Part shown: positions 6,701-36,113 of the stretch, piece after piece
Position numbering within the stretch: position 1 is the stretch's first letter
Layout: every line of letters starts with the position of its first letter
DNA from: Macrostomum lignano
Taxonomy: Eukaryota
DNA: 64,000 bases
NCBI GenBank assembly: GCA_002269645.1
Contig: NIVC01002186.1
Location: forward strand, 62,001 to 126,000
Reading direction: 5' to 3'
The notes under the pieces: model-generated
Seen by the model: the letters and a program-made list of their open reading frames with translations, nothing else
What the model was told of the DNA's origin: nothing
Databases searched by the model: none
Made by a program: the position numbers and the translations under genes

Positions 6701-9700
6701 CCTGACTGATAGAAGTGTGTCAGCTCCCACTGAACCCTGACTGATAGAAGTGTGTCAGCTCCCACTGAACCCTGACTGATAGAAGTGTGTCAGCTCCCAC
6801 TGAACCCTGACTGACAGAAGTGTGTCAGCTCCCACTGAACTCTGACTGATAGAAGTGTGTCAGCTCCCACTGAACCCTGACTGATAGAAGTGTGTCAGCT
6901 CCCACTGAACCCTGACTGACAGAAGTGTGTCAGCTCCCACTGAACTCTGACTGATAGAAGTGTGTCAGCTCCCACTGAACCCTGACTGATAGAAGTGTGC
7001 CAGCTCCCACTGAACCCTGACTGATAGAAGTGTGTCAGCTCCCACTGAACCCTGACTGATAGAAGTGTGTCAGCTCCCACTGAACCCTGACTGATAGAAG
7101 TGTGTCAGCTCCCACTGAACCCTGACTGATAGAAGTGTGTCAGCTCCCACTGAACCCTGACTGACAGAAGTGTGTCAGCTCCCACTGAACTCTGACTGAT
7201 AGAAGTGTGCCAGCTCCCACTGAACCCTGACTGATAGAAGTGTGTCAGCTCCCACTGAACCCTGACTGATAGAAGTGTGTCAGCTCCCACTGAACCCTGA
7301 CTGATAGAAGTGTGTCAGCTCCCACTGAACCCTGACTGACAGAAGTGTGTCAGCTCCCACTGAACTCTGACTGATAGAAGTGTGTCAGCTCCCACTGAAC
7401 CCTGACTGATAGAAGTGTGTCAGCTCCCACTGAACCCTGACTGACAGAAGTGTGTCAGCTCCCACTGAACTCTGACTGACAGAAGTGTGTCAGCTCTACA
7501 GACCCTGACTGACAGAAGTGTGTCAGCTCAGACTGGCCCCTCCTGTCAGCTCACACTGGCTCTTCCTGTTAGTCACACTGGCTCTTCCTGTCAGCTCACA
7601 CTGGCCCTGTCAGCTCCCACAGATCTGCACTCTCGCGAATTTCCGCAGACGACCGGCAGTCGCCCAGCGTCCCGCTGAACGTGAAGGCCACCGTCATGGA
7701 CGGCCGTACAGCGGTGGTCAGCTGGACAGACCGGGACCTCGGCCTGCCCGGCTCGGACGCGGCCGGCCGCCTTTACGAAGTCGAACTCGCCGAGGATGCC
7801 ACCTCGTCCAGATCGTCCTCGGCTGTCGTTGACGCGAAACCGCGCCGATTCAACACGACGGGGCTTCGACTGCGGCTGTCCCAGCTGCGCCCGTTCACCG
7901 CCTACGCGGCCAGGATCCGCTGCCACCTGGGCTACATGCAGAGCGACTTCAGCATGGTGGCCACCTTCGTCACCAAGGCTGAGCCGCCGGGCACGCCGCC
8001 GCTGGAGCTGCGGGTGGCCCGCACCAGCCTGTCCGGCTCCGTGCTGCTCACCTGGCGGCCGCCGCTGGAGCCGAACGGGCCACTGACTGGCTACACAGTG
8101 TACTACGCTCCTCACGGCGGTCGGTTCATCAGCCGCAACGCCGCGGCTAAGGAGACTCAAATTGTTGTCACCGGCCTGCAGCAGTCCAGTCTGTATGTGT
8201 TCAAGGTGCGCGCCGAGAACCAGGCGGGCGTCGGGCCGGCCACCAACTTGACAGCATTTATGACGCCGGATGGTGAGTTCGAGGAGTGAGGTGGCTGCGG
8301 AGTGAGGTGGTTGCGGAGTGAGGTGGCTGCGGAGTGAGGTAGCTGCGGAGTGAGGTGGTTGCGGAGTGAGGTGGTTGCGGAGTGAGGTGGCTGCGGAGTG
8401 AGGTGGCTGGCGGAGTGAGGTGGCTGGCGGAGTGAGGTGGCTGGCGGAGTGAGGTGGCTGGCGGAGTGAGGTGGCTGCGGAGTGAGGTGGCTGGCGGAGT
8501 GAGGTGGCTGCGGAGTGAGGTGGCTGCGGAGTGAGGTGGCTGCGGAGTAAGGTGGCTGGCGGAGTGAGGTGGCTGCGGAGTGAGGTGGCTGGCGGAGTGA
8601 GGTGGCTGCGGAGTGAGGTGGTTGTGGAATGAGGTGATAAATGGGGGCTAGGATAGCAGTTTAGCACTGCATCAGCCTATCAAGCTTGTTATTCTTTAAA
8701 CTGCCAACCCGCAGCAAACGGATACGGCGGCGGCATGGTGCTTGACGCAATTGCAGGATCAGGATCCCAATGTAAGCATAAAGTGAATGGTCAAGCTTTA
8801 GTTCAGCAACAATATCGATACTATAGCGTAGCTAAACTTACTTTTTCAGCCGACCCCCCTCTGCAAGCGGCCAGCTCGCCGGATTCCGAGAGCGACCGGA
8901 AGCTGTGGTTCGTCATCGGCGGCGGATTCGGCCTGGCGATTGTGCTCCTGATTGTTGCCATAGCAACCGTGTGCCTCTGTCGAAGCGGCGAGGCAGCGGG
9001 CGGCACCGGAGGAGGCGGCGGCCGCCGGCGCAGACAGGCGGACCGGGCGGCCAAGGAGGAGGCGAGCCTGATTGGTCAAGAGGCGGCAGCCAATCAGCGG
9101 CACCCGGGCTCGCCACGGGCTCGTTCCGGCAAGAATTCGCCAGACGCGCAGGCGGCGGCGCTGCTGATATCGACAGGCGGAGGCCAGCACCAGCTGCAGC
9201 ACCAGCAACAGACGCCAGACCTCTGCCGCCGGTCGGAGAACTGCCTGGAGCTGCGGCACCTTCCACAGGCGGGCCGTGGCGCTGACGGCCCTGTAGGTGG
9301 ACCGTTCGGCCGGAGCTCGGTGCACCCGCCGCACCACCTGGGCGGCGGCCACCTCGGCCTCGGAGGCGGGCGCGGCTTCATGGGCGAGCCGCTGCTGCTC
9401 GATCACCCGGGCGGCGCGTCGCCGAACCCACCGGGACACTTCAGGAACATCTCCAGCTCCGGGCTTTACCCGCCGGGGACGCCGCCGTCCTACCAGCCAG
9501 GCGCTGCTGCTGCTGCCATCGGGGCTTCGTCAAGAGGCCTTGCCTCGCCGCCGCGAGTTGACGCGCCCGACTTCAGCTCGGGTGAGCCGCGGCCTTGGTG
9601 TACATGGGCTGTTGTGGGGGGTCCTCGTTGTACATTGGTGTCGAGAGGGGGCGTCAATGTACATTGGTGTCGTGAGGGGGCGTCAGTGTGCATTGGTGTC

Positions 9701-12965: not shown

Positions 12966-15404
12966 AGAACACATGGCTCACAAGTCAGCAACATCAGTAG
13001 ATAAAAGCTAGATCCCCCCCAACAAAGGAGAAAAAACTTTCAAGAGTCAAATTAAAAACGACGGCCCAAGAAAGTAGTCAAACCAGCGGTTGCTCTGCTG
13101 AGGGCCCATCAGCCGGCTCTAACTGCCGCCTCATGAACAGGCATTCAACCCAAAGGGCCGCAGCCAACAAAGGCTATAATTTGCTTGCTGAAGCAAACTG
13201 CTTGACAGTGGCTAATTGCTGTAATTGAGCACATCTGTTGTGTTGCTCATATGCATACTCACATGCCTCACTGTCACATGAACAGTAATTAGACATTGCA
13301 ACTTTCCTAAAATCCCAGCTCAGCTCACTGGACAAATTTCATTTTTTTGCTTTGCGCTTATTATTTGAAAACTTCACATCTTTCCTTACATCTAGTATTT
13401 CCTAGTGTGGCTTCTTTATACTCGTGTGTGTTTCTCACTTCGCTTCCGCTCCCGACACAAGACTGTCATCCCGGCTCCTTCCCTCCTGACACAATACTGT
13501 CAACCCGGCTCCTTCCCTCCTGACACAATACTGTCAACCCGGCTCCTTCCCTCCTGACACAATACTGTCAACCCGGCTCCTTCCCTCCTGACACAATACT
13601 GTCAACCCGGCTCCTTCCCTCCTGACACAATACTGTCAACCCGGCTCCTTCCCTCCTGACACAATACTGTCAACCCGGCTCCTTCCCTCCTGACACAATA
13701 CTGTCAACCCGGCTCCTTCCCTCCTGACACAATACTGTCAACCCGGCTCCTTCCCTCCTGACACAATACTGTCAACCCGGCTCCTTCCCTCCTGACACAA
13801 TACTGTCAACCCGGCTCCTTCCCTCCCGACACAAGACTGTCATCCCGGCTCCTTCCCTCCTGACACAATACTGTCAACCCGGCTCCTTCCCTCCTGACAC
13901 AATACTGTCAACCCGGCTCCTTCCCTCCTGACACAATACTGTCAACCCGGCTCCTTCCCTCCTGACACAATACTGTCAACCCGGCTCCTTCCCTCCTGAC
14001 ACAATACTGTCAACCCGGCTCCTTCCCTCCTGACACAATACTGTCAACCCGGCTCCTTCCCTCCTGACACAATACTGTCAACCCGGCTCCTTCCCTCCTG
14101 ACACAATACTGTCAACCCGGCTCCTTCCCTCCTGACACAATACTGTCAACCCGGCTCCTTCCATCCTGACACAATACTGTCACCCCGGCCCACCTGTCCA
14201 GCCACAGAGCCTCCAGCTGTGTCAGATCGCAGGCGATGCACTCCAGCGCCACATCCGTCAGGCGGGCGCACCAGCCCAAGTCCAGCTCGCGCAGCTGCCG
14301 CATCCCGTCGGCCAGCGCGTCAACGGCTTCATCTGTCAGCTTGGAGCAGCCGTTCAGGCAGAGCCGCCGAAGGCCGGGCAGAGCAGCGGCCAGCGATGCG
14401 GCGCCCCGGTCGGTGATCTCCCAGCAGCTGGGCAGGTCGAGGCTGAGCAGCCCGGCCGGACAGTCGGCCAGGCAAGGCAGGCAGCAGTCTGTGAGGTGGC
14501 AGCCCTGCAGTTCCAGCCGCCTGAGGCAGCCGAGCCGGGCCGCCAGCGCCGCCACGCTCTGGTCGGTGAGGCCGGCGCAGTCCGACACGGAGAGGCTGGC
14601 GAGGCTGCCAGACAGCAGGCGGCAAGCGGCCGCGGTCGGCTCGGCCAGCCGGTTGCAGCCGGTGAGGCTCAGAGCGGCCAGCGGCCCGCCGGCGGCCAGC
14701 AGGGCGGCCAATCCGGAGTCGGTCAGAGGCGAATCGATGACGGCCAGGTCGGCAATCCGGCCGGCCAGGTGGGCGAGCCGGGGCAGCAGGCTGTCCAGGT
14801 GGGCGTCAGTCAGGCCGGAGAAGCCGATCGAGTCGATGCGACGCTCGGCAATGCTGGCGAAGAGTCGGTCGATCGACTCCGACCAGTCGGCGTCTGAGTC
14901 GGCGGCCTCGGGCGGGACGAGACGCAGCGGCAGCAGCAGGCGGAGGTGGCGCCAGAAGCTCAGGCGGTAGAGGGCGTCCCGCCAGGCCGGACAGACGCGG
15001 CAGAGGCGGGCGGCCTCGTAGGGGCTGCAGTGGGCGGCCAGCCGCTCGGCCAGCCAGCCGCTTGACGCCAGCTCGGCGGGGTCCGGGGCGGACGGCCGCT
15101 GATTGCAGCGGTGAAGTAATCCGCTGGCCAGATGGCGGCGATGGTGGCGCGGCGTCTGCCGAGGCTGCTGCTGCGGCGGCGGCGGCGATGTCGGCTGTTT
15201 TTGCTGCTGCTGCTGCTGCCCGCCGCCGAAGTTGAAGAAGCGCAGTTTCAGCGCCGCCACGGGACTGGATGGCGGCGGGCCCGCTGCTTCCACGCTTCCG
15301 GCGCTGTTGTTTACGCCGCTGCCGCTGCTGCTGCCCGGACGTCGCAGACTGCGCAGGCTGTGCGTCAGGTCGGCGCAGGCTTTCGCCAGAGCTCCAACAT
15401 CCAT
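11346..15404 (-). CDS. FBXL16: F-box/leucine-rich repeat protein 16-like (3 exons)
   Basis: Exons 15404-14194, 12853-12705, 11494-11346, phases 2 and 1 consistent. F-box-like segment (CSPYEAARLCRVCPAWRDAL) followed by cysteine-containing LRRs. Spliced C-terminus IACDLTQLEALWLDR|CPAISDIGVGYLSTMPKLRLLSLRWC...LSLSG|VTKVTEDGLCHLIRARRLQSLELTNC...LPHCRIYY* parallels the FBXL16 C-terminus (from memory). Start ATG 15404 is assumed. Confidence 0.88.
11508..12025. repeat. 14-bp array GGCTACCGGTTGGT, intronic (FBXL16)
   Basis: Two blocks separated by a short unique stretch. Confidence 0.92.
12893..12965. repeat. (CTGT)n microsatellite
   Basis: Direct inspection. Confidence 0.97.
13455..14186. repeat. 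34-bp array GTCAACCCGGCTCCTTCCCTCCTGACACAATACT abutting the FBXL16 exon 1 donor
   Basis: About 21 copies. Confidence 0.97.
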
Positions 15405-15852
15405 TCGAGTTGTCAATGGATGCCAAATTCACTGCGGGATGAATCTGCCGAGAGGCGTAACGCGCGGCATCCCTAAAAAATCTCTTCGTCTCCGCCCGGG
15501 TTTCCCCTCTTTTCTCCTGGCCCCACCCGCCTCCCACAGCGCACTGCTCAAATTCACAACAGTTTCGTCCTTTCGCTTGCTCGTGCTCTGCTTCGACAGA
15601 TTTCATTGGCTCAAAAATCTCTTTTGCTGGCAGAGGGCGCGGGCAAGGGAACTCCCATCGGCTGTCCTGTCCCTGCCCTCTTCCCCATCCTCTTTTAGCT
15701 ACTTCTTCTCCATATTTCAGAGCGCGGCACGGGCCGGCCTCAAGCCTCTGTTATATACTAGCAGATAGAGCTCACCTTATCCACCTCCCAGCTTCACTTG
15801 TTCTTCTTCATGCTCCTGTGCTGCTCATGCGTTCTAGTCTCTCCGCCCTCAC

Positions 15853-18690: not shown

Positions 18691-20309
18691 GTCTCATTGC
18701 AGCTGTATATAGAGACAGAAATAAATTGTGAGGAAAATGTCACAGACAAAAGATTTTCAATTCTCCATCTGAAAGAAGTGAGTGACTTGCATGGGTTGTT
18801 TTTGGCTAATTGTATATTATAAACGGTATGCGACTATGAACACGTCGCATATTCAGACTGTTTCATTCTTAAAGCAGCAAGAGCAAATAGCATATAAATA
18901 TAAATTAAAATAAAGTTAGGATTTGCATTGCTCAGTACAATAGAGTAGTATCATGCGCACATATATAGTGCAGCTAAATCTGTTACAAAGCCAGATATAT
19001 AATGTTTTAAAGCAGATGTGGCAGCACGAAAAAGAGAGGACGCGGTGCACTTTTAATAGCGATCGTAGCACAAAACTAGGTGTATAAATAAAATTTTAAA
19101 AAGTTTGAGAACCTAGAACCAACAGTACCGTCAGGACACTTAATTAGGAAAATTTAATTATGAATAAAAATTTATTAAATACCAAGATGAATTCTGTGAC
19201 AATGCCGATTTTGTGCAATAACGATACAAAACGGAGAAATGCCAAATAACGCCAGTAATATCCCATACATACTACTATCTTAGAGAGAGATGCGACAGTA
19301 GTGCAGTTAGTTTTACAAGAAACCCTCAAAATGGTTTTTAAATTATAAAACGGTAATTAGAGTTCAATGAAAACAGAAAGAGTTACCAGAATTGGCAAAT
19401 TATGAAAATATAAAGAAATAAAAATTATTGAAGGCGACAGCAGGCACAACAGAGGCCAGTTTGATTAATTTATTTAATTAGTTTCATCAGTAACGCAATC
19501 ACGGAGAGGGGAGGCACACATACACGAAAACTGATGTCGGAAGGTGAGAAAGCGCGCGCCGTGTATTTGTGTGTACGATGCATTTAAACTACTCATAGTA
19601 GGTCGGGAAACTACGATTATTAGAAATTTTTAGGAGGCAGGATTTACTGAAAACCACAAGAGAAATGGAGATCGGTGAGCCCAGCGCTGTAAAACAAATA
19701 TAGTATCATTATAACAAAACAAAAAACCGCACAAGGCAGATAAAGCTGTATAAAAAATAATAATAACTATTATTATTATTATTACCAGGGCAAAGAAAGC
19801 GTTAAAAAATTGCACATTAAATTTGTTAATTTATAACAAAACAACATGATTTTCACTTCCGGATTTGTTGCAATGCAGTTCAACAAACAACTGGGCAAAA
19901 ATGAGATAAAAAGTTGCAAAACAAAAAAAAATAACAAACAATTTTTTATACACCAGAGAAGAAACGGTTGCAAAAGTGCAAAGCCTTTTTTTGTTTAAAT
20001 ATTTTATTTGATAGTCAGAGCTCTGCTGAAGATGCATAGATAAGCGAGATTGTGCTTGCAAAGATGCCCAGTGCTGTATAGCGAAAAACAGCAATTAAAA
20101 AACAGGATATATGCCAGCTGCTGTACCAATTATAATTCTGACTGAACAGTTAAATGTTGTAAAATTTAATTTAAATTAATATAATACACACGCCACACAC
20201 CTCCGAGATGAGGGGCCGCCACCAGTCACTGATAGACATCTTTTAGCAAAAGTAAAAAGTACAGATTGTCCTTCTAATAAGAGAAATCCTTGCAGTTTCA
20301 TTTCACGAC

Positions 20310-20605
20310 ATTGAGGGTTGCAGTTCAATTCCTCAAGATTGAAGTTTGGGGTTCGATTCCCAGACATACATTATGGGTTGGAGTTAAACTCCTCAAGATT
20401 GAAGTTTGGGGTTCGATTCCCAGACATACATTATGGGTTGGAGTTAAACTCCTCAAGATTGAAGTTTGGGGTTCGATTCCCAGACATTGTGGGTTGAAGT
20501 TCAATTCCTCAAGATTGAAGTTTGGGGTTCGATTCCCAGACATACATTATGGGTTGGAGTTAAATTCCTCAAGATTGAAGTTTGGGGTTCGATTCCCAGA
20601 CATTG
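20310..20605. repeat. 56-60 bp array, each unit carrying a perfect Pol III B-box GGTTCGATTCC
   Basis: B-box copies at 20350, 20410, 20470, 20526, 20586. Confidence 0.9.
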
Positions 20606-20719: not shown

Positions 20720-23700
20720 TCATGGATCGTGAAAAATCTGCGTAGCCATAATCTCGCCCGTGCTAAGAGTCTGCGTTGCCATAGTGACCATTTTTCTACC
20801 GCCGTTACAGGCGGCCGGCGTAGTTGGCGCCTGACAACGCGAGCAGCAGCCGCCGCTTGTCGAACCCGATGGCGTTGGCTGCGGCGGCTGCTGATGCAGC
20901 GTTGGCGGCGGCGGCTCATCCTTGCCTTCGGAGAGGTCGGGCGTCAGCACAGGCGACGGCACGGAGCTGCTAGTCCGACTGTCGGCGTCGTCCTGCAGCA
21001 CCCGGCGCAGCTCAGTCTCGTCAATGTCGGACAGGAATTTGATATCGTCGGCCAGCTCGAGGCTGTCCAGCGGTTCGGGGCCCAGCGGACTCTTAACGGC
21101 CGAGGCGGCGGCGGTCAGGGCTCCGCCGGACAGGCGCTCCATCACGGCTCGGTCGGCCTCCTTCCAAACCTGAGTAGCGCGCCATTTAGCGCGGCTCTCC
21201 TTTGGCGCCAGGATGGCGTTGAAGTACAGAATCTCGTTCATCTGGAGTGGGGCGGTTAAATAGGCTAGATTACACGGATGGGAGGGGCGGATATGAGGGG
21301 CAGAGGATAGGAGCGAATGAAGGGGCGGAGGGTAGGAGCGGATGAAGGGGCGGATGGTAGGAGCGGATGAAGGGGCGGAGGGTAGGAGCGGATGAAGGGG
21401 TGGAGGGCAGGAGCGGATTAAGGGGCGGTTGAGCGGATGAAGGGGTGGAGGGCAGGAGGGGATGAAGGGGTGGAGGGCAGGAGCGGATTAAGGGGTGGAG
21501 GGCAGGAGCGGATGAAGGGGTGGAGGGCAGGAGCGGATGAAGGGGTGGAGGGCAGGAGCGGATGAAGGGGTGGAGGGTAGGAGCGAATGAAGGGGTGGAG
21601 GGCAGGAGGGGATGAAGGGGTGGAGGGCAGGAGCGGATTAAGGGGTGGAGGGCAGGAGCGGATGAAGGGGTGGAGGGCAGGAGCGGATGAAGGGGTGGAG
21701 GGCAGGAGCGGATGAAGGGGTGGAGGGTAGGAGCGAATGAAGGGGTGGAGGGCAGGAGCGGATGAAGGGGTGGAGGGTAGGAGCGGATGAAGGGGTGGAG
21801 GGCAGGAGCGGATGAAGGGGTGGAGGGTAGGAGCGAATGAAGGGGTGGAGGGCAGGAGCGGACGAAGAGGGGATATGAGGAGCGGATGAGGAGCGGAGGA
21901 ACGTAGGGGCGGATGCCTGGTAGGGGTGGAAAGTGGAGTAAAGAAGGGAATAAAACTGATGGAGTCCAAAAGATGGATTCCACTATAAATGGCATTCTAA
22001 AATGAATTAATGCCTTAGTATAATTAGTTCACCTTAAAGTGCTTCTGCAAATCGTCCACGTGTTTAAAGATGGACTTGTCAAAGAACACGTGCTCGTGCC
22101 GGCCCAGATCGATGATGCCCCACAGTCTGGCGCAGTGGAACACCCGGCCGCGGCGATTGGTCAGCGTCCGAGGCGCGGTTTGATCTACGCCGGCAGAGCC
22201 GCCGCCGCCGGCGCCGGACTTGCCGTCTCGGTTGGAGCGCCGGCCGCCGGTGATGATGATGTTGAGCTTCTGGGCGCGCCGGCAGGACACTGAGCCGTCG
22301 GCCGGGTGAATGTCGAAGAATAGGGACTGTTTGCGCAGGAATTCTTCCAGCTCGATCTGAGTCCAGCCGATTAGATTGCGGGCCTGCTCGGCGCCTTCGC
22401 CGGACCTGGCCGAATAAAAGCAACAGGAAGCGAGCTTCATTGGCGAGCTCGAATCGGCATGGGAAGGGGGCGGACGGAGAGAGCGGGTGGAAAAGGGGGA
22501 GGATTGGAACAAAGAGGGGGGCGGAAAGGGGAGGAAAAGAATTAAAACTAAGAGGGCGGAAAGGGGGAGGATTGAAACGAAGAGGGCGGAAAGGGGGAGG
22601 AAAAGAATTAAAACTAAGAGGGCGGAAAGGAGAGGATTGAAACGAAGAGGGCGGAAAGGAGAGGACTGAAACGAAGAGGGCGGAAAGGGGGAGGATTGGA
22701 ACAAAGAGGGGGCGGAAAGGGGAGGATTAGAAATAAGAGGGGCGGAAAGGAGAGGAAAAGAATTAAAACTAAGAGGGCGGAAAGGAGAGGATTGAAACGA
22801 AGAGGGCGAAAAGGGGGAGGATTGAAACGAAGAAGAGCGGAAAGGGGGAGGATTGAAACGAAGAGGGCGAAAAGGGGGAGGATTGAAACGAAGAAGAGCG
22901 GAAAGGGGGAGGATTGAAACGAAGAAGAGCGGAAAGGGGGAGGATTGAAACGAAGAAGAGCGGAAAGGGGGAGGATTGAAACGAAGAAGAGCGGAAAGGG
23001 GGAGGATTAAAACGAAGAAGAATCAGGAGGGCGTAATCAGGGGGCAATGGAAACGGAGAATAGGAGTGGGAAACTGAAAGAATCGAGTATTCAAGAACAA
23101 ACTAGCAAGCCCTCTCTACCGAAAGGTGTTCGAATAAATTTCTAGAAAAAATAGAACGCAGCTAAGCAATGTCTGTAAAAGAATCTGCGACATCATCGAG
23201 CTGGCAGCATTTCAAGCTGGGACAACGCGTTGTCAACAATATTTAAGCGAACTTCGACACGTTCCAACACGAAAGATCTGAGAGGAGAAATCGACAGCTT
23301 TTGTTTCCTTTTTTGACTAAGGTTCAACAGTCCATAGATGCGTAGACCATCAGCAATGAGTCATGCCAGTCCTGGCTACCCAGTTACCCAGGTGCTGCTA
23401 TTTCAAAAATCCGCATATTCATACGCGCATAAAGTGCAGGAAAATTCCAGTAAGAGACCTGACGTAGCTTAAAAATTTTCCTATCTAGAAGCTTAAAGCC
23501 TCTCTAATCCAGTGGCTGAGAGAGAGAGAGAGAGGGAACTAAATGAATGCGCATCTTCGCGTCACGTGAACCGCCGCATAGAGGCTGCAGCGCCGCCACT
23601 TCAGCCCAACCCCTCCCCTAACCCTCCCGATCCCAAAACTGATTGGAATTTGCGCAGAAAACGCCTGCAAAAGCAACCACCGCAATGGCATCAGTAGCAC

Positions 23701-25873
23701 TGTATATATATGTAGCCATTTGATTTCTACTGTAAACTAGTCTAATGTAAACTCCAGCGGCAAGCCTATCTATTACACTAAACAAAGAAAGTTATAAAAT
23801 AGCCGAATTACCTAGACAATACGGAGAACAGCTGCGGTATGGACAATAAGCCACCCTTTCGTTCGAGCACTTTGCGCAGAAACATGACAGTTTTGTATTC
23901 GGCCGCCGTCATGCTGACTGGACCGGCACCGCCACTGATGCTGCTGGAGAGACCGCCGCTGCTGCTGCCGCCGCCGGGGCCAGCTGTTGATGTTGGCGTT
24001 GTTGGCAGCGACTTGCCTGCGGGTTGGACAATCGGGACAGTGTTAAACTGCGTCGATAGCAGTGCTCTGACAGACGAAATGGGGATCGGATCTAGTAGGT
24101 CTAGAATCGGATCTAGTAGGTCTAGAATCGGATCTAGTAGGTCTAGAATCGGATCTAGTAGGTCTAGAATCGGATCTAGTAGGTCTAGAATCGGATCTAG
24201 TAGGTCTAGAATCGGATCTAGTAGGTCTGAATCGGATCTAGTAGGTCTGAATCGGATCTAGTAGGTCTAGAATCGGATCTAGTAGGTCTAGAATCGGATC
24301 TAGTAGGTCTAGAATCGGATCTAGTAGGTCTAGAATCGGATCCAGCAGGTCTAGAATCGGATCTAGTAAGTCTAGAATCGGATCTAGTAGGTCTAGAATC
24401 GGATCTAGTAGGTCTAGGATCGAATCAAGCAGGTCTAGGATCGAATCAAGCAGGTCTAGGATCGGATCTAGTAGGTCTAGAATCGGATCTAGTAGGTCTA
24501 GAATCGGATCTAGTAGGTCTAGAATCGGATCTAGTAGGTCTAGAATCGGATCTAGTAGGTCTAGAATCGGATCCAGCAGGTCTAGAATCGGATCTAGTAA
24601 GTCTAGAATCGGATCTAGTAGGTCTAGAATCGGATCTAGTAGGTCTAGGATCGAATCAAGCAGGTCTAGGATCGAATCAAGCAGGTCTAGGATCGAATCA
24701 AGCAGGTCTAGGATCGGATCTAGCTAGTAGGTCTAGAATCGAATCTAGTAGGTCTAGAATCGGATCTAGTAGGTCTAGAATCGGATCTAGTAGGTTTAGA
24801 ATCGGATTAATAGGTCTAGAATAGGATCCAGCAGGTCTAGGATCGGATCCAGCAGGTCTAGAATCAGATCTAGCAGGTCTAGAATCAGATCTAGTAGGTC
24901 TAGAATCGGATCTAGGAGATCCATATTCTGATCTATGAGACCGAGAATAGCTACTAAAGGATGCCTCACCTGAGCTACGCTGATCGCCAGAGCAGCTTGG
25001 CATAACGAGACTCTTAGGCCGGGCCATTCGAGCCGACTGCGAGTGATGCAGGCCGCCGCCGAGGTTGCCGCTGCCGCGATTCCTCGACTGCAACTGCTGC
25101 TGCTGGTGCCGCTGCGAGGAGCCGCCGGCCCCGCTGCCGCCCACGCCGCCGCCGCTCAGGCAGTGCGCAGCAAACGTGTCCCGCAAGCCAACTAGCTCGC
25201 CTTGCAATTCGAACACGTGCCGATGCCTGGCCAGAAACCTGGCAAACTCGGCCTGCGGTCCCACCACGGCTCGAATCTCTGGCGGCGCCTGGCTGAGATG
25301 CCCGGCTAAGCTTTTAATTGGCACCCAGCGGTCCTCGCGCCGGCTAAGCCGGGTCTGAAAGAACCGGACCGCCTCAGTCTCGCGGGCGAAGTCGTTCGGA
25401 TCGCCGCTAACCGAGTGCAAAGCGGCGGCCGCGTCGGAGCCGGACCTGGCCGAGTTGTTCGAACCGATGGAGTCGCGCCGGCCGCCGTTGTGATGCTGCG
25501 AGCGGCCGCTGCCAGATGATGAAGCCGCCGCCGCCGCCGCAGCCGCCGCTTGAGCAGCCGCGGCAGCCATCGTCGAACTCGACGAAGACGACGAGGCCGC
25601 TGTCGCCGCGGTATCGCCGCTGATCTGCGAGAGTGCGCCGTCCAGACTAACGGCAGAGACGGACTCGCCGTTCACTCGAAACAGCGACGGATATTTCTGC
25701 AGGAAGGGCTTGAGCCCGCCGGCCGAGGCCACGGCCTCTCGCATGTCTTGGGTGAAGTGCCGGCTGTGGAAATGCTGCGACAGCGACGTCAGGCGGACGC
25801 CGTCGGGCGAGTCGACATTCATGAGCACCTCAAGAAAATAGAGCATAGACCGGTGCGCCGGGTCGCCCATCAT
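20720..25873 (-). CDS. Egalitarian/LIN-66-like protein: three winged-helix (LOTUS-like) repeats + OB/cold-shock-like domain + C-terminal TQT (LC8-binding-like) motif, about 667 aa
   Basis: Exons 25873-24970, 24016-23812, 22405-22033, 21241-20720, phases 1/2/0 consistent, total 2004 nt. WH1 SMLYFLEVLM..LSQHF..FTQDMRE..GGLKPFLQKYPSLFRV and WH2 AVRFFQTRL..VPIKSLAGHLSQAPPEIRAVVG..EFARFL resemble the Egalitarian N-terminal repeats. GRVFHCARLWGIIDLGRHEHVFFDKSIF..VN/MNEILYFNAIL..KWRATQVW is OB/CSD-like. An acceptor at 25927-25929 means an upstream exon or earlier start is possible. Confidence 0.8.
21290..21865. repeat. 25-bp purine-rich array GGAGCGGATGAAGGGGTGGAGGGCA, intronic
   Basis: Direct inspection. 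Confidence 0.95.
22465..23010. repeat. 29-31 bp purine-rich array GGGCGGAAAGGGGGAGGATTGAAACGAAGA, intronic
   Basis: Direct inspection. Confidence 0.92.
24085..24915. repeat. 21-bp array GGATCTAGTAGGTCTAGAATC, intronic
   Basis: About 39 copies with a duplicated variant block. Confidence 0.95.
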
Positions 25874-26494
25874 TTTGTAGAGGAAAACCTCGCGCGACTT
25901 CAAGTAGGACAGGCACGACTGGGCGTCTGAAATGAACGAAATGCAATTATTATAGATAAATATAGAACTACTGACAGTAGCGCAATTGGACATGTTGCAT
26001 ATAAATTGATTTTTCAGCAACACAGCATAAACTTTAAAAAAAGGTTAATTAGCTTTCCAGAGCCCCATAGCTAGAAACAAAACGTTTCCTTTTTAAAACA
26101 AAACTTATTTATCTTTTGAGGCAGATAAGCCGGTGATAAAAGAAGAAAATAATGACTAGTTACGAAAGAAAAACTGAAGGAAACTTTGTTAGCGAGAGAA
26201 ATGGCGGCCCAAAACTGGAATTCCTTAAGCTTCAGTCTTAACTTCACTCTCATTAGAACAAAATTCTTTAGACTGTCTAGTTAGCTAAGCATGCACACCG
26301 ACCTGCGGCCAGTCCGCCCTGCCGTAGTGCTCGCGGTGATAAATAGATAACTTCAACCAACCCTCACAATGATGTCACGAGCAAGCTAGTACATAACAAT
26401 CATCGTCAAGGATGTACGCTTCTATACTGTACCGTGGTAGGTTTTTTGTGGTTCACGCGTGCCTATTGGCATATCATGCACTTGTTAATCATAC

Positions 26495-26745
26495 GGGGGA
26501 ATTGCTGAGATGCTGAGAGCCTGAGATCCCAATGCTAAAAGGGAGAATTGCTGAGATGCCAATGCTAAAGGGGGGGGGGAATTGCTGAGATGCCAATGCT
26601 AAAGGTGGGGGAATTGCTGAGATGCTGCCAATGCCAAACGGGGGAATTTCTGAGATGCCAATGCTAAAGGGGGGGGGAATTGCTGAGATGCCAATGCTTA
26701 AGGGGGGGGAATTGCTGAGATGCCAATGCTAAAGGGGGGAGTTGC
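26495..26745. repeat. About 37-bp array GGGAATTGCTGAGATGCCAATGCTAAAGGGGG
   Basis: About 6 copies; a related TGCTGAGATG(G/C)CA motif occurs at 16385-16470. Confidence 0.85.
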
Positions 26746-28133
26746 TTTAAATGTCTTATTCTTTAAGAAACTCACCAGTCACATCTGTTGGGTCGCCATC
26801 GCCAATAGGCGTAGTGGCGGCCAAATTATTTGGCACTTGTTGAGCTTGCTGCGGTGAACTGGTCATATATGTGCAGCTTAGAATTGATTTGTTTAACTAT
26901 TATACAGAGATTGTGCGTTAAAAATGCTTTTCAAAACCGGACAAATCAAACCAACGGGGGAACGGATTTTTTATTCACAAATGAATTGAGACTTTACGCA
27001 CTGCCGCGTGGCTGAAGCCGAAACAAAAAGGTGCTTAATATTAAAATTTGTATGTATTGTTATATAATGGGCAGTTTAGCTCAGAAATTGCTTATAGCCG
27101 CGACTCCTCCCGTTGCAAAGCCTCGGAGAAGAAAAGAAAAGTGCCACAGAAACCGAACGGATGGGAGGACCAAAATTTTTTGAGGAGAATTGAATTCGGG
27201 AAAGTGTAAAAGCTACATGGGAGATCGAGGACGAGGGGGGGGGGCAAAGAACCTGGCTGGGAAATATAGGAATGCAACAAACCTGGAACCCTGTCTGTCT
27301 ACCCGCCCTCCGCTTGACTGGTACCCTTCCCTCAGCCGTCCAACCTCGGCCAGCCTCTCTTTACTTCGAGCCAGCTGTCCCTCATCCCCCTCCCCATTCG
27401 GATGGTCTGCAGCTACCGCATCCGAGATCTGCAGATCTGCAGAATCCAACAGAACCAGCGGGCATCCAATAGCAGTGAACGCAGCTGGTCTGGTCCAGCA
27501 CTAGCCTAGCAGACAGTCCGAGCCACGTATGGAAAGCAACGAGAAAGAGAGAGAGAGAGAGAGGAAAAATCAATAGATTCCAGAGGGATGCAGCGCAGCG
27601 GCACTGAACCTTCCGCCTTTTCCATCTATTATTATACACATGTATACTACTTATATACCAAAGTCTACTTACTTCCGTCCCATTCTAGACCCGACGAAAG
27701 TCTAAAGAAGAGATTCTTGAATTTTATTTGTCTTTCAAATACTTAGCAGCTCGCGCGCATCATCTGCCGCCAGGATGGACTGGGGGGGGGGGATTTTTTA
27801 TTGAAGGAAGCAGCTGATCTGCAGCTGCAATGCGAACTATGTTTTCTTTGTCTACAAAAGAGACCGCCCAGGCTGGATGGATGGAGTCTTGCGGACTGGC
27901 GATATTGGCGCAAACCCTTACTTAGCAAGCAGAAAGAGACTAAAATACAAAGCTTTGAACCTCAGATCTGAAGCGAAATTTTCTGCTTTGATATTCAAAG
28001 AGATTTGATTTGAGAGTTTCAGAAGGTTTGATTGGAGAATCGTTAACTCACGATGTTTCAACGCCCACTTTGGCCTAAATGTTATGGTGCTGTAACCGCT
28101 AATTTGGTGTCAGTGCTACTAGTATGATATTAG

Positions 28134-34581: not shown

Positions 34582-36113
34582 GTACCTAGACACTTTGTCA
34601 TCTTACAACTTTGTTATCCAGATGACAATCTGTCCAATATCTCAGAGGGTGGATGACGATGACGAAGTGACTTAGACTTGTGGACACTTCATCTATAAAA
34701 CAAAAGTTTTCAAAGTTAGAACAAAACCCCTCCTCCCCTCCCATATCACCCCTAACATGCACATGATTTTGTTATTTTAAGACATTGTGTTGTACTCTAT
34801 CAACTGCTACCTGCGCCAAGGAATAAAACTGAAAAATGTCCCACTTCTCCTTGCTATAATGTCAGGCAAGTCTATTCACAACTACAATGCCATTTTTAAT
34901 GTGCTGAGAACCCTGGTTGCTGGTCAAGCCATGCCAGAGGCCTGTGTTCTGGATTTTGAAGCCACTGTATGGCAGTCTCTGCGCACTCTTTTTCCCCATG
35001 CAAAATTGCAGGGCTGCCTCTTTCACTATAGCCAAGCAATCTTCCATCAGGTGCAGCAGCAGGGCTTCCAGCGAGCCTACTTGGCTGATCCTGGCACTCG
35101 AGAGTTCTGCCGCATGCTAATGGCGCTGCCATATCTGCCAGCTGAACACATGGCAGAAGGCCTGGCCCAGACTATTGCCGGGGGGCAGTCGCTGGAACTG
35201 CTCGACCTGGCTGAATACGTCAGCAGCACTTAGCTAGAGAATCTAGTGCATGGCATAAGAGAAATCAGCGTATTTGGCCAGGCTATCCAAACTAACAATG
35301 AAGTTGAAGGCTGGCACCATTGCCTGCAGCAGAGGGTGGAGCAAAATCAGCTGACACTCTACCCTCTGATGGAACTGTTGCACAAGGAGGCTCAGCTGGT
35401 GCCAATATACACTGCCTTGGTGTGCGAGCAAGCTGCTAACCAGCACCATCAGAAAATGCAGTATCAGCAGCTTTAAGAATTAGCAAAGCTTAACTAGGCA
35501 AAGTATTGAGCCAGCGAGCTCTCTATGCGCAGCTTTTGGTCAGGTGTAGTCGCCTAGGCCACATTCCCCATTTTGGTGGGCAAGCCAAATAAGTAGAATT
35601 AAATTTCATGTTAAAAGCAGTGACATTTTCTTACTCCCTCTCCTCTCTGCCTCCTTTTAGCACCCAATTTCTTTTTTGTGACTGTGTCTTTGTGCCTTCA
35701 ATCTTTGTGCCAAATGTATTTACATATTTACATATTATTTATTTACGAGTTATACTATATATATATATACTTGTACTATACTAGATACATATGAGATGAC
35801 AATCTTTGTGGTTCTAACTCTGCCATTGTCTGGTCCCAAGTCTAGAATGAGAAAGGAGGAGGGGACAGTCTCACTTTAGCCTCATTTTTTATATATAGGC
35901 CCTACTTGTACATGTATGCAGAAGCATCTGTTAATTGAGTCTACAGACTACAATACTTGTTATTAGTAGATGACGAACTGACCAAACTTTAAAGATTGCT
36001 GATTGGCTGGATGACGAAGTGTCCTACCTTCAATTTCAAAGTAGATGACGAAGTTGTAAGGTGACGAAGTTGTAAAATGACAAAGTTATAAGATGACAAA
36101 GTTTCTAGGATCC
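34582..36113 (+). mobile_element. Mutator (MULE) DNA transposon, internally deleted, about 1.53 kb
   Basis: Perfect 9-bp TSD ACACAAACA (34573-34581 and 36114-36122). TIRs CCTAGA(C/A)ACTTTGTCATCTTA(C/T)AACTTTGT. GATGACGAAGT subterminal repeats. Confidence 0.88.
34787..35476 (+). pseudogene. MULE transposase C-terminal fragment with one in-frame stop (35231-35233)
   Basis: PLLLAIMSGKS..Y, VLDFEATVWQSLRTLFPHAKLQGCLFHYSQAI and (R/Q)TNNEVEGWHH are MULE DDE-domain motifs. ORFs 34787-35233 and 35246-35476 share one frame; the TAG falls where a conserved Trp is expected. N-terminal part is missing. Confidence 0.88.

What the first reader, a model, noticed from the sequence alone, without database searches (positions are those of the whole stretch)
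20720..25873. Egalitarian-like protein with the exonuclease domain replaced by an OB/cold-shock fold: candidate alternative dynein-mRNA adaptor
Seen: the spliced 667-aa product has three helical repeats (about 25850-25650, 25400-25200, and one split across exons 2 and 3), then a beta-rich aromatic domain (GRVFHCARLWGIIDLGRHEHVFFDKSIF..ILYFNAIL..KWRATQVW), and ends in MVTMATQTLSTGEIMATQIFHDP. Known, recalled rather than searched: Drosophila Egalitarian has N-terminal winged-helix/LOTUS-like repeats (N-terminal region binds BicD), a DEDD exonuclease-like RNA-binding domain, and a C-terminal ..SQTLSTGD.. site binding dynein light chain LC8; TQT is the canonical LC8 motif. No DEDD domain is present here. 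Inference: both ends of the Egl adaptor are kept while the RNA-binding module is swapped, giving a LIN-66-like architecture that could couple a different class of mRNAs to BicD/dynein.
Basis: partly seen in the sequence, partly recalled or inferred. Interest (0 to 1): 0.8.

Follow-up and report, generated by a model that had tools for sequence, protein, structure and literature searches.

The report
Egalitarian relative with cold-shock domain
This flatworm gene encodes a relative of the fly mRNA-transport adaptor Egalitarian in which a cold-shock-type barrel takes the place of the exonuclease-like module; molluscs, annelids and other spiralians share this build, so it is probably their untested version of the adaptor.

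Summary
It is 99% identical to a Macrostomum lignano protein.

The protein has three Egalitarian-type winged-helix domains (Pfam WH_Egal, E 7.7e-54). These are followed by a five-stranded OB barrel of the cold-shock/S1 class. The C-terminal tail aligns with the mapped dynein-light-chain site of fly Egl (TQTLSTGEI against SQTLSTGDV). No exonuclease domain is encoded anywhere in the window.

The gene is not a one-off. The same build is conserved across flatworms, nemerteans, annelids, molluscs, brachiopods and rotifers. Every named relative with the exonuclease build was an arthropod or nematode, and no protein carries both modules.

The ED2 residues that read the RNA minor groove in fly Egl are invariant here. 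The ED1 reading residues are replaced.

Best reading: this is the spiralian counterpart of Egl, dimerised by LC8, that binds RNA through ED2 plus the barrel and may couple it to BicD-dynein. BicD, LC8 and RNA binding are all untested. The comparison with LIN-66 is not supported, and the direction of the domain swap is unknown. I found no paper describing this family.

The parts
26776..26866 (-). Possible upstream coding exon (ATG at 26866-26864, 91 nt, GT donor at 26775-26774). It encodes MTSSPQQAQQVPNNLAATTPIGDGDPTDVT.
   Evidence: tblastn match at 100% to the N-terminus of P0002. Sequence and splice sites read. Whether it is used is unproven.
24970..25926 (-). Exon 1. Coding runs from ATG 25873 to 24970. 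The reading frame stays open upstream to an AG acceptor at 25928-25927, which could be a cis- or trans-splice acceptor.
   Evidence: P0001 starts inside this upstream extension.
25622..25864 (-). ED1, the first Egl-type winged-helix domain (aa 4-84). In fly Egl the matching domain binds BicD CC3 and the RNA minor groove.
   Evidence: Pfam WH_Egal. Aligned to Egl residues 12-77. AF2 pLDDT above 87. Foldseek hit to the Egl cryo-EM chains.
25151..25399 (-). ED2, the second Egl-type winged-helix domain (aa 159-241). It carries SLAGHLSQA, with G191/S194/Q195 matching Egl G124/S127/Q128.
23812..24016 (-). Exon 2, encoding a disordered linker and the first half of ED3 (ED3 starts at 23921).
22033..22405 (-). 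Exon 3, encoding the second half of ED3 (22405-22249), a linker, and the first half of the OB/cold-shock-like barrel (22176-22033).
20720..21241 (-). Exon 4, encoding the second half of the OB barrel plus a flanking helix (21241-21110), a disordered region, the C-terminal tail and the stop codon (20722-20720).
20723..20794 (-). C-terminal tail KMVTMATQTLSTGEIMATQIFHDP (aa 644-667). It holds a TQT anchor motif homologous to the Dlc/LC8 site of Egl and is predicted to form a beta-hairpin.
   Evidence: The Egl site is defined by the S965K/S969R mutant (10.1101/550277).

Best explanation
This is the Macrostomum lignano member of a conserved spiralian branch of the Egalitarian family. Its build is ED1-ED2-ED3 (LOTUS-like winged helices), one divergent cold-shock/S1-type OB barrel, a disordered region, and a C-terminal TQT tail.

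The proposed mechanism has four steps, all inferred.
1. An LC8 dimer clamps two tails and dimerises the protein, as Dlc does for fly Egl.
2. ED2 inserts its conserved SLAGHLSQA helix into an A-form RNA minor groove, and ED1 contributes with altered base preference.
3. The basic OB barrel, next to ED3, supplies the third RNA contact that ExoHD-XAD supplies in flies. It probably binds a single-stranded or loop segment, so the RNA signals recognised differ from fly localisation signals.
4. ED1 docks on the cargo-binding coiled coil of BicD and couples the RNP to dynein-dynactin.

Shown here: the architecture, the homology of each part, and the residue conservation. Not shown here: any of the binding events.
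For: Architecture
- Three WH_Egal domains, E 7.7e-54.
- A family profile hits Egl (9rvy_D) at E 1.8e-36. ED1-ED2 align colinearly, and the tail aligns to KLVDAESQTLSTGDVVITKIFFQ.
- AF2 models the three winged helices, a five-strand barrel and a C-terminal hairpin with confidence.
- Foldseek's top 12 hits are Egl chains from the Egl-BicD-RNA complexes. The next hits are S1 and cold-shock barrels.

The barrel is cold-shock-type
- A profile of 18 related barrels that includes this one hits Unr/CSDE1 CSDs at E 1.9e-6 and YB-1 at about 1e-4.
- hhalign against canonical CSDs gives 96% probability.
- The barrel is basic: pI is 10.2 here, with a family median of 9.7.

Residue level
- G, S and Q of the ED2 reading helix are invariant in 140 OB-type and 41 Exo-type sequences.
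- ED1 and ED2 are about 40% identical to those of scorpion Egl.
- 165 of 205 OB-type sequences keep the tail within their last 45 residues.

Family
- OB and Exo modules are mutually exclusive among 291 relatives.
- The ED1+ED2 tree splits the Exo type (arthropods, nematodes) from the OB type (spiralians) in 100% of 200 bootstraps.

Roles of the fly parts come from PMC13186709 and 10.1101/550277.
Against: - The ED1 residues that read bases in fly Egl (His31, Cys35) are invariant in the Exo type but replaced in the OB type (Ser/Gly). In this protein they are Thr29 and Gln33. A bulky residue at Cys35 (C35Y) impairs RNA and BicD association in flies.
- In flies, deleting XAD severely reduces RNA binding. 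There is no guarantee that a barrel can substitute for it.
- In the hhalign register, only 3 of 7 canonical CSD aromatic contact positions are kept (F459, W465, F477). The spiralian barrel alone matches CSDs weakly (12% probability), and no Pfam CSD hit was found. It could be a non-RNA-binding barrel.
- The ED1-ED2 linker is about 80 aa here, against a median of 11 in the Exo type. The domain-swapped dimer geometry of fly Egl therefore need not apply.
- LC8 is a general dimerisation hub, so the tail alone does not imply dynein.
- The ED1-BicD interface residues are not listed in the paper text or supplements, so their conservation could not be checked.
- No expression or localisation data were available.
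Confidence: 0.55

Rival explanations
1. The protein is a cytoplasmic RNA regulator (translation or stability, in the manner of CSDE1/Unr, YB-1 or LIN-66) with no link to BicD or dynein. LC8 serves only as a dimerisation clamp, and the winged helices and barrel bind RNA.
For: LC8 binds many non-dynein partners as a dimerisation hub. In flies its main role for Egl is dimerisation. The closest sequence relatives of the barrel are the CSDs of the translational regulators Unr/CSDE1 and YB-1. BicD binding could not be tested, and the ED1 helix differs from fly Egl.
Against: ED1 keeps clear ED1 identity. It scores as ED1 rather than ED2 or ED3 and is about 40% identical to arthropod ED1. It is among the most conserved parts of the family. 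In fly Egl the known partners of this domain are BicD and RNA.
Confidence: 0.28
2. The OB barrel is a non-canonical cold-shock-like domain used for protein-protein contacts or as a structural spacer, not for nucleic-acid binding. Any RNA binding rests on ED1 and ED2 alone.
For: Four of the 7 canonical aromatic or His contact positions are lost (W8 to V, F17 to I, H29 to D, F30 to K). No Pfam CSD or S1 hit was found. The best fold match is the S1-like domain of DBC1/CCAR2, from a PDB entry on the DBC1-SIRT1 protein interaction (8ez6_A). The invariant set H460, H473-E474-H475, D479 is unlike RNP motifs.
Against: The domain is strongly basic. F459, W465 and F477 sit at the canonical stacking positions. 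The barrel occupies the position of the RNA-binding ExoHD-XAD module.
Confidence: 0.2
3. The winged helices act like extended LOTUS domains (Oskar, TDRD5/7) that recruit and stimulate a DEAD-box helicase such as Vasa. The protein would then be a germ-granule scaffold rather than a transport adaptor.
For: The Egl domains are described as closely resembling LOTUS domains (PMC13186709). ED3 is strongly conserved in this family but is dispensable for RNA binding in fly Egl.
Against: Sequence and fold searches return Egl itself, not LOTUS proteins, as the top matches. The ED2 RNA-reading residues are invariant.
Confidence: 0.07
4. The architecture is a gene-model artefact: exons encoding an exonuclease domain are missing, or the locus is a decaying copy.
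For: Introns are long and full of tandem repeats. One database model of a sister copy (P0002) carries an extra 106-aa insert inside the barrel.
Against: No exonuclease-type sequence occurs in any frame of the 64-kb window. The P0002 insert has no match in the window. The ORF is intact with canonical splice sites. More than 140 orthologues from six phyla show the same colinear build without an exonuclease. Many were called on short contigs (about 2-6 kb) from JGI, ENA and Logan assemblies, and one is labelled a complete ORF (P0027).
Confidence: 0.02

Closest known systems
Drosophila Egalitarian (Egl) and C. elegans EGAL-1: the exonuclease-type Egl of arthropods and nematodes
   Same: - Colinear ED1-ED2-ED3 winged-helix domains of the same Pfam family (WH_Egal).
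- About 40% identity within ED1 and ED2.
- Invariant ED2 minor-groove residues (G/S/Q).
- Disordered linkers.
- The same C-terminal QTLSTG[DE]-type Dlc/LC8 tail at the very end of the protein.
- A short Cys-rich patch before the tail.

   Different: - No ExoHD (PF01612) and no XAD; a single cold-shock-like OB barrel follows ED3 instead.
- The ED1 base-reading His31/Cys35 are replaced.
- The ED1-ED2 linker is longer.
- ED3 is well conserved here but divergent in Egl.
- The protein is 667 aa against 1004.

Cold-shock domain proteins (Unr/CSDE1, YB-1/YBX2, LIN28, bacterial Csp) and S1-like barrels (DBC1/CCAR2, ribosomal S1, PNPase, NusA)
   Same: Five-stranded beta1-beta2-beta3-(short helix)-beta4-beta5 barrel. 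TM-scores reach 0.75 (normalised to target length) at 2.6-2.8 A rmsd. The barrel is basic. F459, W465 and F477 lie at CSD stacking positions. Profile-level homology runs through related multi-barrel proteins.
   Different: The barrel does not reach any Pfam CSD or S1 model. The RNP1 and RNP2 motifs are degenerate (LWGII and VFFD in place of GFGFI and VFVH). It has its own invariant signature, LWGIIDLGxHEHVF..D...SRAKWRAT.VW. It is combined with Egl winged helices and an LC8 tail, a combination not described for CSD proteins.
C. elegans LIN-66
   Same: A cytoplasmic protein with long disordered regions and one functionally required cold-shock domain (PMC11184513; 10.64898/2026.07.07.737059).
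   Different: LIN-66 is reported as nematode-specific and keeps the canonical CSD residues. Neither paper mentions winged helices or dynein.
LOTUS/OST-HTH domain proteins (Oskar, TDRD5/7, MARF1/Limkain b1)
   Same: A winged helix-turn-helix fold repeated in tandem in RNA-associated proteins. Egl domains are described as LOTUS-like (PMC13186709).
   Different: Sequence models and fold search pick Egl, not LOTUS proteins. These proteins have no Tudor, OSK or NYN partner domains and a different C-terminal tail.
Multi-barrel Egl-like proteins (Priapulus caudatus XP_014669431 and unnamed transcript-derived proteins P0219, P0190, P0170, P0221)
   Same: WH_Egal domains, barrels of the same family, and (in P0185, P0190 and P0219) the QT.STG tail.
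   Different: They carry one to five or more barrels and three to five winged helices, with no clear ED1. Their barrels are closer to canonical CSDs (Pfam DUF7930, S1-like and CSD hits).

Membership tests
Egalitarian/EGAL-1 (exonuclease-type Egl) | Three N-terminal Egl winged-helix domains (Pfam WH_Egal), colinear ED1-ED2-ED3 | tested here: met
   Pfam E 7.7e-54 with 3 stretches. Profile against Egl PDB chain E 1.8e-36. Foldseek to 9rw7_D E 7.5e-10. Domain-specific HMMs place the domains as ED1, ED2, ED3 in order.
Egalitarian/EGAL-1 (exonuclease-type Egl) | 3'-5' exonuclease homology domain (PF01612) followed by the tetrahelical XAD | tested here: not met
   No PF01612 hit. No hit to an ExoHD+XAD HMM built from 8 Exo-type relatives (named ones are arthropods), either in the protein or in any frame of the 64-kb window.
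Egalitarian/EGAL-1 (exonuclease-type Egl) | C-terminal Dlc/LC8-binding site (SQTLSTGD; Ser965/Ser969 needed) | tested here: met
   At sequence level, TQTLSTGEIMATQIFHD aligns to SQTLSTGDVVITKIFFQ and both serine positions are kept. Physical binding is not testable here.
Egalitarian/EGAL-1 (exonuclease-type Egl) | ED2 minor-groove reading residues Gly124, Ser127, Gln128 | tested here: met
   G191, S194 and Q195 in the window protein. These are invariant or nearly so in 140 OB-type and 41 Exo-type sequences.
Egalitarian/EGAL-1 (exonuclease-type Egl) | ED1 base-reading residues His31 and Cys35 | tested here: not met
   Exo type: H in 39/41 and C in 39/41 (the other two are alignment gaps). OB type: mostly S and G. 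The window protein has T29 and Q33.
Egalitarian/EGAL-1 (exonuclease-type Egl) | ED1 binds the CC3 cargo site of BicD | not testable with these tools
   Interface residues are not given in the paper text or supplements. No multimer prediction was available.
OB-type Egl-like family (database name 'Egal-1 winged helix domain-containing protein', about 560-680 aa) | Colinear ED1-ED2-ED3, one OB barrel, disordered region, C-terminal QT.STG tail | tested here: met
   Full-length alignment with 45 members at 35-49% identity. The domain order is the same as in nemertean, annelid, mollusc and brachiopod members.
OB-type Egl-like family (database name 'Egal-1 winged helix domain-containing protein', about 560-680 aa) | Invariant barrel signature LWGIIDLGxHEHVF..D and SRAKWRAT.VW | tested here: met
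   All invariant columns are present in the window protein (G456, H460, L464, W465 ... W514, W520).
Cold-shock domain / S1-like OB fold | Five-stranded antiparallel beta-barrel with OB topology | tested here: met
   Domain-only AF2 model has pLDDT 90 and pTM 0.79. Foldseek probability is about 1.0 to the DBC1 S1-like domain and to Unr, YBX2, YB-1 and Lin28B CSDs and S1 domains, with TM up to 0.75.
Cold-shock domain / S1-like OB fold | Sequence match to the family model (Pfam CSD PF00313 or S1) | tested here: not met
   No Pfam hit even at E<=10 for the isolated domain. hhalign of the spiralian barrel alignment against canonical CSDs gives only 12% probability, in the correct register.
Cold-shock domain / S1-like OB fold | Homology through intermediate sequences | tested here: met
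   The spiralian barrel HMM finds barrels in multi-barrel relatives (domain E from about 1e-13 to 1e-5). A joint profile hits Unr CSDs at 1.9e-6 and YB-1 at about 1e-4. hhalign gives 96.4% probability. Individual members hit Pfam DUF7930, CSD and S1-like.
Cold-shock domain / S1-like OB fold | RNP1/RNP2 aromatic platform for single-stranded nucleic acid | tested here: inconclusive
   3 of 7 positions are kept (F9, F15, F27 correspond to F459, W465, F477) and 4 are changed (V458, I467, D479, K480).
LC8 partners | TQT-type anchor in an otherwise disordered segment | tested here: met
   ATQTL at aa 649-653 follows a region with pLDDT below 50. Binding itself is not testable here.
LIN-66 | Sequence homology to nematode LIN-66 (CSD at aa 101-171 plus a structured region up to about aa 376) | not tested
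Both papers describe it as nematode-specific, and neither mentions winged helices or dynein.

The most novel reading that the evidence does not exclude
The winged-helix + cold-shock barrel + LC8-tail build is the ancestral protostome form of Egalitarian, and the exonuclease module was acquired later on the arthropod and nematode lines. In spiralians this protein would be the missing RNA adaptor for BicD-dynein. It would recognise localisation signals by a stem read by ED2 plus a single-stranded element held by the barrel. It would then underlie microtubule-dependent mRNA segregation such as the centrosomal mRNA localisation seen in mollusc embryos.
Probability: 0.3. Interest if true: 0.8.

Novelty: new variant of a known kind. 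Interest (0 to 1): 0.6.

Why it matters
Egl is the best-understood adaptor linking specific mRNAs to a motor, and the field describes it as restricted to invertebrates. Its structure was analysed only against close relatives, with at least 55% identity.

This work shows that a whole superphylum, the Spiralia, carries a different version. It keeps ED1-ED3, the ED2 RNA-reading helix and the LC8 tail, but has a cold-shock-type barrel where flies have ExoHD-XAD. That is a natural experiment on which parts of Egl are essential.

It also nominates a concrete candidate for the unknown machinery behind mRNA localisation in spiralian embryos. Centrosomal mRNAs in Ilyanassa and Spisula are noted in PMC8595238. 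The experimental tractability of M. lignano and of mollusc and annelid embryos is my own background knowledge.

If the protein turns out not to bind BicD, it would instead show how the Egl RNA-binding chassis was reused for another purpose.

Tried and rejected
- Pfam and PDB sequence searches with the barrel alone, or with the spiralian barrel alignment, gave nothing meaningful. Homology to CSDs emerged only after adding barrels from multi-barrel relatives.
- A word-indexed search with the 1394-aa multi-barrel protein P0219 returned only itself. The same search with the barrel alignment A3 returned only a few fragments, including Rotaria. The taxa of most multi-barrel relatives therefore stay unknown.
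- The Egl structure paper and its supplements do not list ED1-BicD interface residues, so interface conservation could not be scored.
- The LIN-66 link could not be tested by sequence. The two papers give no support for a shared architecture.
- Literature searches for the family ('egalitarian protein homolog'; 'Egal-1' with 'winged helix'; Egalitarian with cold shock) found no description of it. One broad search was badly posed and uninformative.
- PF26288, listed in precomputed annotations for 12 members, is absent from the local Pfam copy and could not be identified.
- The missing-exon and pseudogene readings were rejected.
- An exhaustive search for an exonuclease-type Egl in spiralian genomes was not possible. 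Only the top 150 of 504 profile hits could be inspected.

Full report
**Observation**

The minus strand between 25873 and 20720 carries four exons: 25873-24970, 24016-23812, 22405-22033 and 21241-20720. Every intron has GT..AG ends. The product is 99% identical over its whole length to Macrostomum lignano BOX15_Mlig021118g1, so the window comes from that flatworm.

The third helical repeat is split at codon 370 between exons 2 and 3. The beta-rich domain is split at codon 494/495 between exons 3 and 4.

A further exon may exist. An ATG at 26866 opens a 91-nt exon with a GT donor. It joins in frame to an AG acceptor at 25928-25927 and adds 48 residues, as in UniRef A0A1I8I3F0. Orthologues, however, start at the position of ATG 25873, so which start is used remains open.

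**Domains**

Pfam finds three copies of WH_Egal, the Egalitarian winged-helix domain, at E 7.7e-54.

AlphaFold2 run on a 46-sequence family alignment models these parts with pLDDT above 90:
- three winged helices (aa 5-84, 159-241, 335-422);
- a five-strand barrel with a short helix between strands 3 and 4 (aa 450-521), plus a flanking helix.

A C-terminal beta-hairpin (aa 648-665) is modelled at pLDDT about 75. The linkers are disordered.

A profile of the family hits one PDB protein convincingly: Egalitarian in the 2026 Egl-BicD-RNA cryo-EM structures (9rvy_D, E 1.8e-36). ED1 and ED2 align colinearly, and the last 23 residues align to KLVDAESQTLSTGDVVITKIFFQ. Foldseek agrees. Its 12 best matches are Egl chains (down to E 7.5e-10), followed by OB barrels.

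No exonuclease domain is found in the protein. None is found in any reading frame of the whole 64-kb window either.

**The middle domain**

Modelled on its own, the barrel has pLDDT 90 and pTM 0.79. Its best fold matches all have Foldseek probability near 1 and modest E-values (5e-3 to 5e-2):
- the S1-like domain of DBC1 (TM 0.75, 2.8 A);
- the CSDs of Unr, YBX2, YB-1 and Lin28B;
- the S1 domains of bS1, PNPase and NusA.

By sequence the spiralian barrel is too divergent for Pfam or PDB searches. Against canonical cold-shock domains it reaches only 12% hhalign probability, though in the correct register. Its HMM does, however, detect barrels in longer relatives that carry several copies.

A joint profile of 18 such barrels, including this one, gives clear results:
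- Unr/CSDE1 CSDs at E 1.9e-6 and YB-1 at about 1e-4;
- 96% hhalign probability against canonical CSDs;
- individual members touch Pfam DUF7930, CSD and S1-like.

In the hhalign register, three of seven canonical stacking positions are kept (F459, W465, F477) and four are changed. The domain is basic, with pI 10.2 here and a family median of 9.7. It also carries its own invariant set: H460, W465, D469, H473-E474-H475, D479, R511, W514 and W520.

**The tail**

The tail is more than a chance TQT. The block QT[LIVM][SFAV]TG[DE][IV] lies within the last 45 residues in 165 of 205 OB-type relatives and in 21 of 46 exonuclease-type relatives. Most of the rest are fragments.

The block coincides with the Egl site whose S965K/S969R mutant loses Dlc binding, dimerisation and, secondarily, RNA and BicD association (10.1101/550277).

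**Family and distribution**

The word-indexed search found 153 relatives. The listed ones are mostly about 560-630 aa with the same build, and parasitic-flatworm members reach about 1000 aa. Named members come from flatworms, nemerteans, annelids, molluscs and a brachiopod. They carry names such as 'Egal-1 winged helix domain-containing protein' or 'egalitarian protein homolog'.

An exhaustive profile search found 504 proteins at E<=1e-3. I classified the 291 sequences fetched, using HMMs for the barrel and for ExoHD+XAD. The result was 204 OB-type, 46 Exo-type and none with both.

Named Exo-type proteins are all arthropods or nematodes: scorpion, millipede, mite, wasp, stick insect, copepod, Trichuris and Panagrolaimus.

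Named OB-type proteins are spiralians, including the rotifer Seison. Parasitic flatworms carry two paralogues. There is one ecdysozoan exception, Priapulus, whose 934-aa protein has several winged helices, about four barrels and an SQTVSTGDI tail.

A neighbour-joining tree of ED1+ED2 separates the Exo type from the OB type in 100% of 200 bootstraps. Within each group it roughly follows the species tree.

I read this as one gene lineage whose middle module differs between Ecdysozoa (arthropods and nematodes) and Spiralia. The Priapulus protein hints that the barrel build may be the older one. That inference is weak, because its winged helices are divergent and a separate Exo-type gene in Priapulus or in spiralians could not be excluded.

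**Residue-level comparison with the fly structure**

According to PMC13186709:
- ED1 binds BicD CC3 and, through His31 and Cys35, the RNA minor groove;
- ED2 reads the next minor groove through Gly124, Ser127 and Gln128;
- ExoHD and XAD complete the RNA pocket;
- ED3 is dispensable;
- the short ED1-ED2 linker forces ED1 and ED2 of different chains to share one RNA.

Here the ED2 helix SLAGHLSQA keeps G, S and Q. These are invariant or nearly so in both family types.

The ED1 helix differs. It is LHDLSCQFG in every Exo-type sequence aligned at that helix, but ISQLAGRFG in the OB type and LTSLSQHFH in this protein.

The ED1-ED2 linker has a median of 11 residues in the Exo type and 26.5 in the OB type. 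It is about 80 residues here. ED3 is strongly conserved in the OB type and sits just before the barrel.

**Mechanism (inferred)**

LC8 dimerises the protein through the tail. ED2, and ED1 with altered preference, bind double-stranded RNA. The basic barrel next to ED3 replaces ExoHD-XAD as the third RNA contact, most likely on single-stranded RNA. ED1 couples the complex to BicD and dynein.

I put this at about 0.55. The main rival (0.28) is an RNA regulator that uses LC8 only for dimerisation and never meets BicD. It is also possible that the barrel is a non-RNA-binding cold-shock-like module (0.2; this does not exclude the main model). A LOTUS-like helicase-recruiting role (0.07) and a gene-model artefact (0.02) are unlikely.

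**Comparison with what is known**

The protein works most like Egl, but it fails two defining features of Egl proper: ExoHD-XAD and the ED1 His/Cys pair. I therefore file it in the Egl superfamily as an OB-type variant, not as Egl.

LIN-66 shares only the presence of a cold-shock domain and disorder. It is described as nematode-specific, and neither paper mentions winged helices or dynein.

I found no paper that describes the OB-type family. Current papers say only that Egl is restricted to invertebrates, and the structural paper compared only close orthologues.

**Limits**

- No binding, expression or localisation data exist here.
- Only the best 150 of the 504 profile hits could be inspected, and few carry organism names.
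- The tree is a simple distance tree on about 150 columns.

Noticed in passing
window 20308-20603, 21309-21889, 22492-23018, 24085-24915, 26521-26739: Every intron of the gene and both flanks hold long tandem arrays: 60-bp x5, 25-bp x23.5, 31-bp x16.8, 21-bp x39.5 and 32-bp x6.8. They create long spurious ORFs on both strands.
   Followed up: partly
window 26776-26866 and 25927-25928: A possible extra 5' coding exon with a GT donor joins in frame to an AG acceptor 54 nt upstream of ATG 25873. It gives a 715-aa product, as in UniRef A0A1I8I3F0. The AG could instead be a spliced-leader acceptor, because orthologues start at the position of ATG 25873.
   Followed up: partly
window 22033-22176 and 21110-21241 (protein aa 456-520): The barrel carries an invariant polar and aromatic set (H460, W465, D469, H473-E474-H475, D479, R511, W514, W520) that canonical cold-shock domains lack. 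The His cluster might be a metal or phosphate site.
   Followed up: no
window 20723-20794 (aa 644-667): The tail contains two ATQ half-sites (MATQTLS and MATQIFH) predicted as a beta-hairpin. The second strand is conserved in exonuclease-type Egl too (VVITKIFF), which suggests more than a single-strand LC8 motif. A Cys-rich patch just upstream (GGCCSRCQ) is also present in scorpion Egl (QCCNCCCH).
   Followed up: partly
related proteins P0185 (Priapulus caudatus XP_014669431), P0219, P0190, P0170, P0221, P0206: Longer relatives combine three to five Egl-type winged helices with one to five or more cold-shock-like barrels and, in P0185, P0190 and P0219, the same QT.STG tail. Only the Priapulus protein has a named organism.
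   Followed up: partly
related protein P0169 (Branchiostoma belcheri XP_019619473, 2119 aa): An amphioxus protein has at least nine WH_Egal domains fused to an AAA-type ATPase, with no barrel or exonuclease. Similar proteins are P0236 and P0243.
   Followed up: no
related proteins P0141-P0144 versus P0005-P0015: Parasitic flatworms carry two paralogues of the OB-type gene: a long one (about 900-1150 aa) and a short, more divergent one (about 590-690 aa) with a weak ED1. M. lignano itself has at least three copies (P0001/P0002, P0003, P0108).
   Followed up: partly
related protein P0002 (UniRef A0A1I8I3F0): This database model of a sister copy is named 'Phosphodiesterase I'. It carries a 106-aa insert inside the barrel that has no match in this window, so it is probably a mis-predicted intron.
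   Followed up: partly
alignment A1, region after the barrel (window aa about 540-640): Most family members share short conserved motifs in the disordered C-terminal half (SIEEEI..LP, DAAPSGAGVVPVWNF, SMVAERYYMN). The Macrostomum protein keeps only a weak version of the first (LELADDIKFLSDID).
   Followed up: no
window 2508-8289 (+), 14112-15416 (-), 34787-35233 (+), 39113-42600 (+): Neighbouring genes are exons of a fibronectin type III receptor-like protein, a leucine-rich-repeat protein, a MULE transposase fragment and a Rab GDP-dissociation inhibitor.
   Followed up: partly
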